From contig NC_068999.1 in assembly GCF_001194135.2 (NCBI RefSeq), forward strand, positions 22,145,021 through 22,208,883: a DNA stretch of 63,863 bases, given 5' to 3'. This document shows positions 36,301 to 39,300 of the stretch, in pieces. The notes under the pieces are model-generated. The model searched no databases. It saw only the letters and a program-made list of their open reading frames with translations, and was not told where the DNA came from. A program made the position numbers and the translations under genes. How positions within the stretch are numbered: position 1 is the stretch's first letter; each line of letters starts with the position of its first letter. This DNA comes from Octopus bimaculoides. Lineage: Eukaryota.

Positions 36301-39300
36301 AAAGCTGGACAAAAGAACCAAAACAAGGAAAAACTTGGAAATAGAATTAAAAAGAGAGGAAAAAATACAGCAGAATAAAATAAAGTGTCAAAAATATGCA
36401 ATAGCAATAGTAGTAATGATAATGATGATGATGATGATGGTAGTGGTAATGACATTAAAGAGAGGGAATTTCTGTTAAAGATAGCACTAATTGTAACATT
36501 GAAGATGATTATAATGATAAAGAGTAATTGTAATTATGGTTATGACAGCATCAATATATGCTCATTTTCAGCAAACTAACAAGGAACTAAAGAGCAATGT
36601 TAACAATAGCAAGCAATAACCATATTGTCAACATTGTTATTTGTTTACCTTAACTACTAATAGTCTGTAATTGTAGTCAGTAAAATGGAGAGGACCCGTT
36701 ACACTATACCAGTTTTTGTGCCAAACTAGATTTCAGTGAGTTTCAAGTCTAACAAGAACTTAAGATCAACTCTCAGAATATGTGAAGAGAAACTCGTTTG
36801 GCAGCAATCTTATCACAAAGGCAAAAATTATGAGGAGTGTATTAGTTTTAATTAATCTAATAATCAAAGAAGCAATGTAAATGGTACTAATACAGCTGCT
36901 GATAATGATAATTATGATGATGATAATGACAAGGAGAGCAGTAGAGAAAGATTGAGATGTGTTTGGCAAGAGAAGATAAGCAAAAAAACGTGCTGAATGT
37001 TTGTCTGCTGGATAAGAAAGACAGAGATTGAGAGTTAGTTGTTTATCACAACACAAACACACCTCATTATACTAGAGTTTCAAAGCTCTACTAGTGATTG
37101 CTGACAAGCACAATCATTTGAACTACTGTTAGTGTGATAAGTATGTATATGAGGTTAGGCATTTCTTTTTTTTCTTCTTTGTATTAGTATGGATGTTTGC
37201 TTTGTTGGTCTAATCTGTATAGTCATGATTATGGGTGTTTGCATGTTTTCCTTGCTTTATCTGTTTGTAGTTGCATGTACATATGAGTGTAATTGCACCA
37301 TTTAAGTTGTATATTTGTTTTATTTATCTGTATGTAATTGAAAGTCAATGTAAGAACTGAAATTTAGGTAAGTTTTTAGCAAAAATTCCAGGATGATGAC
37401 ACATTAAAGTTCCTTCTTATTTTTAAGATTAATCTTGAAAAAAGGCAAAGCTATGTGTCAAATTGTGGTTCTTTTGTTTTTAGCCTGACAAACATACATA
37501 GAAATATATCTAAAATGAGAATGTATATAATGTATACTGGCATTCATTAGAAAGTTTCCCTTGGTTAATTGAACATCTAAATCTCAGCTCAAAGTCGGAA
37601 TTATACTATGCCGTTCTTTGCAAGATTTGAATAATAGGTTGATAAGCATCAGTACGGTATTATTTACAATAATAATTTTGATCAATAAATATAAGGGCCT
37701 GACCAGCCACTAACAGATTGAGCCAGTTGCTATCCAGATGTCAGATGTTTGAGGACCCTGAACTACTGACTTCCTCCACCAAATAGGGATAATGCCAGTC
37801 TGTTGGAGTAATGAGCTCTGTGAGATGGAAGTGGCCGCTGCAGTGAGTGTTGCTGTCCATTCTCCAAGGCAATGCTGTCACGGGTACGGCTGAGCACACA
37901 ATTTGTTCTGGGGTATGTGGCCAATTTCCCCCTCCCATCTTCTGCTGCTATACCTCCCCCTTTTCTTCTTCTTCCCCACCCCCACCTTTCTTATCTCTCT
38001 TTTTTCCTGTTTATTTATATTTAAATGTTAATAATTTTATTCTGAAAAGCTATTTTAATAAAGTAAATAGTTTCAAAGAAATTTTCACATAAGCATAAGA
38101 TTTCAAATCTGTGAGATGTATTTATCAATTGAATCATACAGATTCTCAAAACACATTTATAAAATGTACACTTATATAAAATATATACATGTATAGGTAA
38201 TCAAGATGTTACTAAAACTGATATTCAACAGCATGTCATCATGTTTTCTATTAAGAGGTTTATCTCTACCAGCTTATATATGTAATTTGATGCATGTAGA
38301 TCATGTATGTTGACAATATAGTGCAACAAAATATAGGAATATTCTAATTTATAGATGTTGAGCAATGTATATTTGTTATATAATGTCATAGATAAAGATA
38401 ATGTAATTTGGATCAGGTAATAGAATACATAAAGATTTTGTTCATATAATGCAGTGCAATGTCTATAGATCATGTAAGTAATGTTATGTGTGCATGAAAG
38501 AATGAAATTCCAATGCAAAACTTAATGAGAAAACCTTATAGTGTAGTAGATTTTCATAGCATAAGCAGGAATCTTATTCTGGTCTTCTGCGCTAAGTACT
38601 TTTTTAGTGTTATCACACCTCTACAGTCACTTACCTGCCGACACTAGGTGAGTAACCATCATCATACGTCATTAATCAGGGTGATTAGAGAATTAAAAGA
38701 AAATAAAAAAAAAGAAAAGAGAATGTAGTTAAAAAGGCTTGTCCACACTTTACAAAACAAAAGAAATAAAATGGCATAAATAATATGTGTTTATATGTCT
38801 CATAGACTGTTTGTGAAAAGATGAGAAATAAGTCATCAGTTTAAGTTTATTGGATAGAACTTGAAAAATATTTTTTTAAAAAATGCCTTTTTTTTTAAAT
38901 GAATGATAAGGGATATTTAAATTTTTAATAAAATCTTTTAGTGAAAGAAATCTTGAACCTGAAATATTGGAAATATTTTGATGATGAAAAAATAAATATA
39001 TTAAAGATATAAGTTCAACAAAGAACAATATTTGAAATTAGTTTCAAATATTAATTAATATATCTAAGTTTACAGGGAGACCACAAAATATCTAATTTTG
39101 CAGCTATAAATCATTTTAGCTGAAAAGTAAAGCGAAAATGATACATTGATATCGAAATAAGATACATCGTTGAGAGAGAATTTGGGGAGATGCGGGAGAA
39201 GTGAAGCACAATGGCAGTGAACAAAAGAGTCTATGGATATGCAGATTCGTTACATGTTTACATGAATAAATAAAACTTTAGCATATTCAATTAATTGATG

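What the first reader, a model, noticed from the sequence alone, without database searches (positions are those of the whole stretch)
38581..38730. Microexon A (VSA) has a displaced polypyrimidine tract and an AG-free spacer
The minus strand reads tcttttcttttttttttattttcttttaattCTCTAATcaccctgattaatgacgtatgatgatggttactcacctAG|TGTCGGCAG|GTAAGT. That is a U-rich tract, a YNYTRAY-like branch point about 40 nt upstream with no intervening AG, and a consensus donor. The flanks retain CpGs in otherwise CpG-poor DNA, suggesting constraint (inference). VSA resembles the recalled fly AIA insert in length and hydrophobicity. There is no UGC just before the acceptor, so regulation may differ from microexon B.
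Basis: partly seen in the sequence, partly recalled or inferred. Interest (0 to 1): 0.75.

Follow-up and report, generated by a model that had tools for sequence, protein, structure and literature searches.

The report
Candidate 9-base microexon in Src42A-type kinase
Deep inside a 23.5 kb intron of an invertebrate Src42A/FRK-type tyrosine kinase gene sits a well-formed, in-frame 9-base exon candidate (adding Val-Ser-Ala to a surface loop of the kinase). It lies at the codon position where flies add Ala-Ile-Ala, but its use in mRNA could not be shown with the data available.

Summary
The sequence is as described. On the minus strand it reads TAG|TGTCGGCAG|GTAAGT (exon 38643..38635), with a 37-nt pyrimidine tract 46-80 nt upstream, a CUCUAAU branch-point match, and a 92-nt AG-free zone. 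It lies in a 23.5 kb phase-1 intron of a Src42A/FRK-type kinase gene and would change ..DYLQ-GKGR.. to ..DYLQ-VSA-GKGR...

For it being real:
- It is the only one of 21 crude in-frame candidates in the window with both the tract and the AG-free zone.
- It carries the only CAGGTAAGT 9-mer on either strand.
- The fly AIA insert is real and sits at the same codon position.

Against or limiting:
- In the one fly genome examined (D. palustris), AIA comes from tandem acceptors (TAG|CAATTGCAG|G), not a separate microexon.
- No comparable exon appears in the homologous intron of about 74 other animal contigs.
- No 3-aa-insert isoform was found outside flies.
- CpG retention is not significant.
- No RNA data exist for this species. 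A relative with about 80% intron identity is known only from a 1.6 kb contig that does not reach the site.

Verdict: a plausible, lineage-restricted, probably regulated cassette microexon (about 0.45). Rivals are a chance pseudo-exon (about 0.30) and a recursive splice site (about 0.15).

The parts
44332..44490 (-). Upstream constitutive kinase exon (GTMDPKDF...SLLDYLQ plus the first base of the next codon). Its donor is CAAG|gtaatt.
   Evidence: tblastn to Src42A orthologues at 82-91% identity
20809..44331 (-). The 23.5 kb phase-1 intron that hosts the candidate microexon.
38728..38732 (-). UUAAC, a possible distal branch point at the 5' edge of the AG-free zone (branch A about 86 nt before the exon).
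   Evidence: It is a sequence match only and was not mapped.
38687..38723 (-). Displaced polypyrimidine tract (24/25 Y in the best window). It contains UCUU and UCUC motifs of the kind bound by PTB-type proteins.
38684..38690 (-). CUCUAAU, which matches YNYURAY and the fly CUAAY branch-point consensus. The branch A lies 41 nt before the acceptor G.
   Evidence: consensus from PMC8797185
38646..38737 (-). AG dinucleotide exclusion zone of 92 nt upstream of the acceptor.
38644..38645 (-). Acceptor AG (cacctAG|), the first AG downstream of the tract.
38635..38643 (-). Candidate microexon TGTCGGCAG. In phase 1 it encodes V-S-A and restores the Gly codon.
38629..38634 (-). Donor GTAAGT. With the exon's CAG it forms the only CAGGTAAGT in the window on either strand. 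CAG|GTAAGT is also a juxtaposed acceptor/donor motif of the recursive-site type.
38625..38657 (-). Local hairpin in which GGUUACUCACCUAG pairs with CAGGUAAGUGACU. The microexon sits in the loop and both splice sites sit in the stem.
   Evidence: The 38-mer has dG -12.6 kcal/mol, the most stable of 52 GTRAGT contexts and within the top 0.5% of random 38-mers. The 68-nt fold has z = -1.1, which is not significant.
20630..20808 (-). Downstream constitutive kinase exon ((G)[12 protein letters not shown]...HRDLAARN...DFGLARVIK).

Best explanation
The site is a genuine splice-site module that defines a 9-nt, frame-preserving cassette microexon in the kinase domain of a Src42A/FRK-type tyrosine kinase gene.

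Proposed mechanism (inferred, none of it shown):
- U2AF/U2 engage the strong pyrimidine tract and an adjacent branch point, either CUCUAAU at -41 or UUAAC at -86.
- The 3' splice site is then the first AG downstream, at the end of a 92-nt AG-free zone.
- The exon is far too short for exon-definition enhancers, so a perfect U1 site (CAG|GUAAGU) compensates.
- The weak, displaced acceptor, the UCUU/UCUC-rich tract and a stem that pairs both splice sites make the exon skipped by default and included only under regulation. PTB-type repression is the more likely control. SRRM/eMIC activation is less likely because the UGC element is absent.

Inclusion converts ..[20 protein letters not shown].. to ..[23 protein letters not shown]... 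This lengthens the C-terminal end of helix alphaD and the alphaD-alphaE loop on the surface of the C-lobe. Brachyceran flies toggle Ala-Ile-Ala at the same position.
For: - Sequence and frame fit.
- Gene identity: Src42A orthologues at 82-85% identity.
- It is the unique candidate combining an AG-free zone of at least 60 nt with at least 22/25 Y, among 21 crude candidates in the window. 0.55% of minus-strand AGs have that combination, and 0 of 200 Markov simulations reached it. 0 of 43 candidates in 68 homologous introns elsewhere reached it.
- It carries the only CAGGTAAGT in 64 kb on both strands.
- The region is single-copy in the window, so it is not an evident repeat.
- The fly AIA insert is at the identical codon position, and both isoforms are annotated in D. 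palustris and Haematobia.
- In an AlphaFold model of fly P0025, AIA lies at the end of helix 251-259, before the loop 260-266 and helix 267-286.
- Loop length varies among Src-family kinases. c-Src is one residue longer than the form without the insert.
- Long AG-free zones, UCUC-rich tracts and CUAAY branch points are published hallmarks of regulated fly microexons (PMC8797185). Distant branch point/AG-exclusion exons are a described class (PMC1431707).
- Pyrimidine-rich flanks and PTBP1 regulation of alternative microexons are documented (PMC4317164).
Against: - There is no transcript or junction evidence of any kind. The species' own proteins are absent from the protein collection (best hit 85%).
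- No isoform with a 3-aa insert at this site was found outside brachyceran flies in about 500 sequences inspected. Clustering at 90% identity hides isoforms, so this is weak negative evidence.
- No comparable exon was found in the homologous intron of Homalodisca, five ENA animal contigs or 68 metagenome-derived animal contigs. The tick has no intron here.
- The fly insert arises by tandem acceptors, not by a microexon.
- The acceptor is TAG with only about 50% pyrimidines in its last 20 nt.
- CpG retention is not significant.
- The selection criteria were chosen after seeing the site.
Confidence: 0.45

Rival explanations
1. The site is a chance pseudo-exon. An AT-rich 23.5 kb intron happens to place a consensus donor 9 nt after an AG that follows a low-complexity T-run, and the site is never used.
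For: - Crude in-frame AG...GTRAGT candidates are frequent: 7 in this intron, 14 on the non-coding strand of the window, and 2.7 per 23.5 kb in simulations.
- T-rich low-complexity tracts are common in this genome. 3% of minus-strand AGs have at least 22/25 Y upstream.
- There is no conservation in any other species examined.
- CpG content is not unusual.
- About 0.36 CAGGTAAGT 9-mers are expected in the window from base composition (my calculation frequencies).
- The features were picked post hoc by a reader scanning 64 kb.
Against: - The joint occurrence of a perfect donor, an in-frame AG, a 92-nt AG-free zone and a 24/25 Y tract has an expected count of roughly 1e-4 to 4e-2 in this intron, depending on how it is conditioned.
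- It coincides with the position and length of a proven alternative segment in flies.
- A stem pairs both splice sites and ranks in the top 0.5% of local folds.
Confidence: 0.3
2. The site is a recursive splice site (ratchet point) used to remove the 23.5 kb intron in two steps. The upstream exon is spliced to the CAG at 38637-38635, which regenerates AAG|GTAAGT. That regenerated donor is then spliced to the exon at 20808, leaving no trace in the mRNA. The TAG 9 nt upstream would be a minor or unused acceptor.
For: - A juxtaposed CAG|GTAAGT is the defining motif, and it is the only AGGTAAG on the coding strand with a strong tract upstream.
- The host intron is long.
- Ratchet points have prominent pyrimidine tracts and lie in long introns (10.1101/006163 and PMC8605326).
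- Joining the upstream exon end CAAG to GTAAGT gives a consensus donor.
Against: - 99.5% of fly ratchet points have TT at -5/-6 (10.1101/006163), and their acceptor motif resembles an ordinary 3' splice site with a more prominent tract. Here -5/-6 are G and C, and the tract ends 55 nt before the CAG.
- The first AG after the tract is the TAG, which the scanning model favours.
- Recursive splicing has not been documented for this unknown lineage.
- There is no conservation or lariat evidence.
Confidence: 0.15
3. The site is a by-product of a mobile element or other insertion. The T-run would be the antisense of an A-rich retroposon tail, and the inverted repeat around the exon would be element-derived. 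Any splicing would be recent, low-level exonisation.
For: - On the + strand the tract reads as an A-rich run.
- The window is full of transposon remains: mariner/Mos1 fragments at 45250-46318 and reverse-transcriptase fragments at 40870-41121 and 61997-62698.
- An 11-nt imperfect inverted repeat flanks the exon.
Against: - No second copy of 38200-39100 exists anywhere in the 64 kb window.
- There is no Rfam or tRNA-like match.
- No open reading frame or element domain lies nearby.
Confidence: 0.07

Closest known systems
Drosophila Src42A alternative 'AIA' segment (tandem 3' splice sites)
   Same: - Orthologous gene.
- Identical codon position (after ..YLQ, before GKGR) and identical phase-1 intron.
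- Identical length (9 nt).
- Both segments are preceded by TAG and end in GCAG.
- Both add three small or hydrophobic residues ending in Ala.
   Different: - In D. palustris the 9 nt are contiguous with the downstream exon and are toggled by two acceptors (TAG|CAATTGCAG|GCAAAGG).
- In the window the 9 nt stand alone, 5.7 kb from the upstream exon and 17.8 kb from the downstream exon, with their own donor.
- The window's downstream exon has no AG 9 nt upstream of its acceptor.
Vertebrate c-src neuronal N1 microexon (18 nt). The comparison rests on established knowledge (work of the Black laboratory), not on a test run here.
   Same: - A Src-family kinase gene with a tiny frame-preserving cassette exon.
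- Its inclusion depends on intronic elements.
- Its upstream CU-rich tract binds PTB to repress it outside neurons.
   Different: - N1 lies in the SH3 domain (n-Src loop), not the kinase domain.
- It belongs to a different paralogue.
- Its regulation by PTB/nPTB, Fox and SRRM4 is experimentally shown. Nothing is shown here, and no UGCAUG lies within 300 nt downstream.
eMIC/Srrm234-dependent neural microexons of flies (PMC8797185)
   Same: Long AG exclusion zone, UCUC-containing pyrimidine tract, CUAAY branch-point match and a weak acceptor.
   Different: - There is no UGC near the 3' splice site.
- The 5' splice site is perfect rather than weak.
- The tract lies upstream of the best branch-point match.
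- The fly Src42A exon listed as eMIC-dependent is a different, 27-nt linker exon.
Exons with distant branch points and long AG exclusion zones (Gooding et al. 2006, PMC1431707)
   Same: A 92-nt AG-free zone, with a branch-point match and a pyrimidine tract at its upstream end and the first AG used as the acceptor. This class was identified by analysis of AG exclusion zones.
   Different: That class was defined in human, and branch points were mapped experimentally for tested cases. Here the branch point is only a motif match, and a nearer candidate (-41) also exists.
Recursive splice sites (ratchet points) and expressed RS-exons such as Ubx mI/mII (10.1101/006163; PMC8605326)
   Same: A juxtaposed acceptor and consensus donor inside a very long intron, and a microexon-sized unit whose inclusion could depend on splice-site competition.
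   Different: - It lacks the TT at -5/-6 of fly ratchet points and has no tract next to the acceptor.
- In Ubx-type RS-exons the regenerated donor sits at the 5' end of the exon. Here AAG|TGTCGG regenerates none, and only the CAG acceptor would.

Membership tests
Frame-preserving alternative cassette microexon | AG acceptor and GT donor flank a segment of 51 nt or less | tested here: met
   TAG|TGTCGGCAG|GTAAGT at 38645..38629
Frame-preserving alternative cassette microexon | Length is a multiple of 3 and the segment has no stop in the frame set by the flanking exons | tested here: met
   9 nt in phase 1 gives V-S-A and restores Gly
Frame-preserving alternative cassette microexon | Transcripts or isoforms that include the exon | not testable with these tools
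   No RNA data are reachable. The species' own proteins are not in the collection (best 85%). No isoform with a 3-aa insert was seen outside flies, and 90% clustering hides isoforms.
Frame-preserving alternative cassette microexon | Conservation of the exon and its intronic flanks in related species | tested here: inconclusive
   The exon is absent from about 74 homologous introns of distant animals. The one close relative (Logan SRR11869385, 80% nt identity) is known only from a 1.6 kb contig that does not reach the site. Attempts to reach it failed.
eMIC/SRRM4-dependent neural microexon | UGC motif close upstream of the 3' splice site | tested here: not met
   The nearest TGC is 133 nt upstream
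eMIC/SRRM4-dependent neural microexon | Long AG exclusion zone, UCUC-rich pyrimidine tract and strong CUAAY branch point | tested here: met
   The AG-free zone is 92 nt. TCTC occurs at -79 and -48. CTAAT occurs at -45. The criteria come from PMC8797185.
eMIC/SRRM4-dependent neural microexon | Inclusion depends on the Srrm234 eMIC domain | not testable with these tools
   This needs co-expression or knockout experiments
Recursive splice site (ratchet point) | Juxtaposed AG|GTAAGT in a long intron | tested here: met
   CAG|GTAAGT at 38637..38629 in a 23.5 kb intron
Recursive splice site (ratchet point) | TT at -5/-6 (99.5% of fly ratchet points) with a prominent pyrimidine tract at the acceptor | tested here: not met
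   Positions -5/-6 of the CAG are G and C. The tract ends 55 nt upstream of the CAG. The criterion comes from 10.1101/006163 and is a fly criterion, while this lineage is unknown.
Recursive splice site (ratchet point) | Recursive intermediates, lariats or a sawtooth read pattern | not testable with these tools
   No RNA data
Distant branch point / AG-exclusion-zone exon | Extended AG-free zone with a branch-point consensus and a pyrimidine tract at its upstream end | tested here: met
   The zone is 92 nt, TTAAC lies at -89 and the tract spans -80..-44. Only 2 of 3250 minus-strand AGs are as extreme.
Distant branch point / AG-exclusion-zone exon | Mapped branch point at the distal site | not testable with these tools
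   This needs lariat sequencing or primer extension
Fly-type Src42A tandem-acceptor segment | Same codon position, phase and 9-nt length | tested here: met
Fly-type Src42A tandem-acceptor segment | The 9 nt are contiguous with the downstream exon, with two acceptors 9 nt apart | tested here: not met
   The window's downstream exon has ...ttattctgttgtag|GAAAGG with no AG at -11/-10. The 9 nt lie 17.8 kb upstream.

The most novel reading that the evidence does not exclude
The site is a tandem-acceptor recursive splice site. TAG and CAG, 9 nt apart, are both followed by a consensus donor. Splicing to TAG includes VSA. Splicing to CAG regenerates AAG|GTAAGT and removes the rest of the intron without a trace.

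On this reading the window's TAG-N9-CAG|GT module and the fly's TAG-N9-CAG|G tandem acceptor are the same ancestral alternative segment of the alphaD-alphaE loop. They would differ only by the gain or loss of the downstream intron. The stem that pairs both splice sites would tune the choice.
Probability: 0.08. Interest if true: 0.65.

Novelty: new member of a known kind. Interest (0 to 1): 0.4.

Why it matters
- If the exon is used, an invertebrate outside the flies toggles three residues at the same surface position of the Src42A kinase domain as flies do, but by a different splicing route. That would point to recurrent or ancient selection for isoform switching at the alphaD-alphaE junction. 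It would give a kinase-domain counterpart to the SH3-domain neuronal microexons of vertebrate c-src.
- The site would also be a clear natural example of a 9-nt exon recognised through a displaced pyrimidine tract, a long AG-free zone and a perfect donor. That makes it useful for testing how very short exons are defined.
- If the exon is not used, the site is an instructive decoy. It shows that a near-perfect splice module can sit unused in a long intron.

Tried and rejected
1. Looked for insert-bearing isoforms. This used a full kinase-domain search, a junction profile containing VSA, AIA and VYD and cluster members. Only brachyceran fly AIA forms turned up.
2. Tried to reach the close relative's copy of the site.
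   - An exon-plus-intron ORF search found P0317/L002 at 80% nt identity, but that contig is only 1.6 kb.
   - A representative search with the 98-aa ORF next to the microexon gave 0 hits.
   - An exact look-up of 10 neighbouring ORFs found none in the collection.
   - A 20-mer scan of metagenome contigs gave 0 hits.
   - A paper search for the run accession gave 0 hits.
3. Surveyed homologous introns in D. palustris, tick, Homalodisca, five ENA contigs and 80 metagenome contigs. No homologous microexon appeared, and the tick has lost the intron.
4. Tested whether candidates A and B are duplicates. Their flanks are not alignable.
5. Tested for a known RNA family or a repeat. None was found.
6. 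Tried a structure prediction of the spliced window protein. The fly isoform was modelled instead.
8. Rejected the idea that the fly eMIC-dependent Src42A exon is the AIA segment. It is a 27-nt linker exon.
9. The species was not identified.
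Full report
**What the window is.** The window is eukaryotic, AT-rich DNA (32% G+C) with strong CpG depletion (observed/expected 0.26). It is full of microsatellites, assembly gaps and transposon remains. The minus strand carries the 3' two-thirds of a Src42A/FRK-type non-receptor tyrosine kinase gene. These exons run from the second half of the SH2 domain to the stop codon (..DYKEAAVVR*) and match arthropod Src42A proteins at 82-85% identity. The species itself is not in the protein collection. 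I could not identify it.

**The observation.**
- The acceptor AG is at 38645-38644.
- The 9-nt segment TGTCGGCAG is at 38643..38635.
- The donor GTAAGT is at 38634..38629.
- The segment lies in a 23.5 kb phase-1 intron. The upstream exon ends ...GAC TAC TTA CAA G|gtaatt at 44332. The downstream exon starts tag|GA AAG GGT CGT at 20808.
- Inclusion reads G+TG TCG GCA G+GA, so ..DYLQ-GKGRTL.. becomes ..DYLQ-VSA-GKGRTL...
- Upstream lie a 37-nt pyrimidine tract (38723..38687; 24/25 Y in the best window) and a CTCTAAT that fits YNYTRAY, with its branch A 41 nt from the AG.
- A second branch-point-like TTAAC lies at -89.
- No AG occurs for 92 nt, and no TGC occurs for 130 nt.

**Is it more than chance?**
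- Bare AG-N(3k)-GTRAGT open-frame candidates are common. There are 7 in this intron, 14 on the opposite strand of the window, and 2.7 expected per 23.5 kb of Markov-1 sequence.
- Only this candidate combines a long AG-free zone with a strong tract. 0.55% of all minus-strand AGs have an AG-free zone of at least 60 nt together with at least 22/25 Y. Only 2 of 3250 are as extreme as this site.
- No simulated intron (0 of 200) and none of 43 crude candidates in 68 homologous introns of other animals reached those values.
- CAG|GTAAGT here is the only full 9-mer donor consensus on either strand of the window.
- The region is single-copy within the window and matches no Rfam family.
There are 3 CpGs in 150 nt, and 10% of such windows have that many.
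- The criteria were chosen after seeing the site, so these figures overstate significance. Even so, the configuration is clearly unusual.

**The fly comparison.**
- The recalled AIA insert is real. Src42A isoforms of D. yakuba, D. navojoa, D. miranda, D. virilis, D. palustris and Haematobia read ..EYLQ-AIA-GKGR... That is exactly the position of VSA.
- Forms with and without AIA are annotated for the same D. palustris gene.
- The D. palustris genomic locus shows how AIA is made. The intron ends ...atatcttag|CAATTGCAG|GCAAAGGTCGT. Two acceptors 9 nt apart on the downstream exon produce the two forms, and there is no free-standing microexon.
- The window's downstream exon has no AG 9 nt upstream.
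- The fly Src42A exon reported as dependent on the Srrm234 eMIC domain is a different, 27-nt exon (chr2R:6009798-6009824; PMC8797185 table S3). It corresponds to the TNSFSGVFE linker insert seen in P0025.
- The position, phase and length therefore agree with the fly. The splicing architecture does not.

**Other species.**
- The intron at this codon is widespread and always phase 1. It is usually short: 689 nt in Homalodisca, 0.5-4.1 kb in five ENA animal contigs, and 0.1-2.3 kb in 68 metagenome-derived animal contigs. It is absent in a tick.
- None of these introns holds a recurrent or VSA-like 9-nt exon with comparable signals.
- A junction-profile protein search found no 3-aa insert outside flies. 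Clustering at 90% identity hides isoforms, so this is weak negative evidence.
- One close relative exists. Logan contig SRR11869385_724911 aligns to window 45093..43387 at 80% nucleotide identity through exon and intron.
- That contig is only 1.6 kb long. Every route I tried to reach its copy of the microexon region failed.
- The decisive conservation test could therefore not be run. If the exon is real, it is restricted to this lineage.

**Where the insert would sit.**
- Alignment to c-Src structures places VSA in the segment SLLDFLKGETG--KYLRLPQL. The insert-bearing form is two residues longer than c-Src, and the form without the insert is one residue shorter.
- In an AlphaFold model of the fly AIA isoform (mean pLDDT 74), AIA (257-259) forms the last turn of helix 251-259 (alphaD). 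A loop (260-266) and helix 267-286 (alphaE) follow.
- This is a surface position of variable length across Src-type kinases, so a three-residue insert is structurally tolerable.

**Mechanism (inferred, not shown).**
- The anatomy fits a regulated exon with a displaced tract and an AG exclusion zone. This arrangement is described for distant-branch-point exons (PMC1431707) and for fly neural microexons, which have long AG-free zones, UCUC-rich tracts and CUAAY branch points (PMC8797185).
- The first AG after the tract would be the acceptor. A perfect U1 site would compensate for an exon too short to carry enhancers.
- The UCUU/UCUC motifs and the absent UGC point toward PTB-type repression rather than SRRM/eMIC activation.
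- A 33-nt hairpin pairs GGUUACUCACCUAG with CAGGUAAGUGACU. The microexon sits in the loop and both splice sites sit in the stem.
- As a 38-mer this hairpin is the most stable of the 52 GTRAGT contexts in the window and in the top 0.5% of random 38-mers. The 68-nt fold is not significant against shuffles (z = -1.1).

**Rivals.**
- Chance pseudo-exon (about 0.30). Candidates are frequent, nothing is conserved, and the selection was post hoc.
- Recursive splice site (about 0.15). CAG|GTAAGT is a juxtaposed acceptor/donor in a long intron, and CAAG+GTAAGT would regenerate a donor. However, the TT at -5/-6 found in 99.5% of fly ratchet points is absent, and the pyrimidine tract ends 55 nt upstream of the CAG rather than next to it.
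- Element-derived sequence (about 0.07). The T-run could be an antisense A-rich tail, but no second copy exists in the window.
- The most novel reading not excluded combines the first two ideas. TAG and CAG would be tandem acceptors ahead of one donor, giving +VSA or traceless recursion. That would be the intron-bearing equivalent of the fly's TAG-N9-CAG tandem acceptor (probability about 0.08).

**Verdict.** My best estimate is a real, lineage-restricted, regulated 9-nt cassette microexon of a Src42A-type kinase (0.45). It would be a new member of a known kind. It needs junction reads and the relative's sequence before it can be called real.

Noticed in passing
window 33073-33081 (-), acceptor region to 33140: There is a second in-frame 9-nt candidate in the same intron: ttgcag|TTTATGATG|gtaagtg (VYD). 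It has a UGC at the acceptor, a T-run about 90 nt upstream and an alternative TAG acceptor that would give a 21-nt exon. Its flanks are not homologous to those of A.
   Followed up: partly
window 38625-38657 (both strands): An imperfect 11-nt inverted repeat surrounds the microexon. The sequence just upstream of the acceptor (GTTACTCACCT) mimics the 5' end of U1 and pairs with the donor. On the + strand the same palindrome reads CTAG|GTGAGTAAC, a donor-like site.
   Followed up: partly
L001 (D. palustris) 5988-6008: The fly Src42A AIA/no-AIA isoforms come from tandem acceptors 9 nt apart (tcttag|CAATTGCAG|GCAAAGG).
   Followed up: yes
L002 (Logan SRR11869385 contig) vs window 43387-45093: A related species' genomic contig matches the window at 80% nucleotide identity through intron and exon. 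The exon peptide is identical. This is the obvious source for a conservation test, but the organism is unknown.
   Followed up: partly
window 45250-46318 (-): Mariner/Mos1-type transposase remains lie inside the intron between two kinase exons. They match the HTH_48 and Transposase_1 domains.
   Followed up: partly
window 40870-41121 (+), 61997-62698 (+), 17827-18144 (+), 21774-22166 (-): There are weak reverse-transcriptase, endonuclease, BED-finger and HTH fragments. They look like decayed retroelements and DNA transposons in the introns.
   Followed up: partly
window 46854-46998 (-): The SH2-kinase linker intron, where flies carry the 27-nt eMIC-dependent exon (TNSFSGVFE), is only 145 nt here. 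It shows no obvious equivalent. An internal ctgcag is followed by an in-frame stop.
   Followed up: no
L006 (Rhipicephalus) 38084-38144; L012-L014, L022, L030: The tick has no intron at this codon. Several metagenome-derived animals shift the donor by 3-4 nt, giving loops one or two residues longer (LQG-x-GKGR, LQS-x-GRGR). The length of this loop therefore varies by splice-site sliding across animals.
   Followed up: partly
window 11.8, 18.4, 33.3, 56.4 and 61.1-61.6 kb: There are runs of N (assembly gaps of about 200-500 nt), each flanked by TA or CA/TG microsatellites.
   Followed up: no
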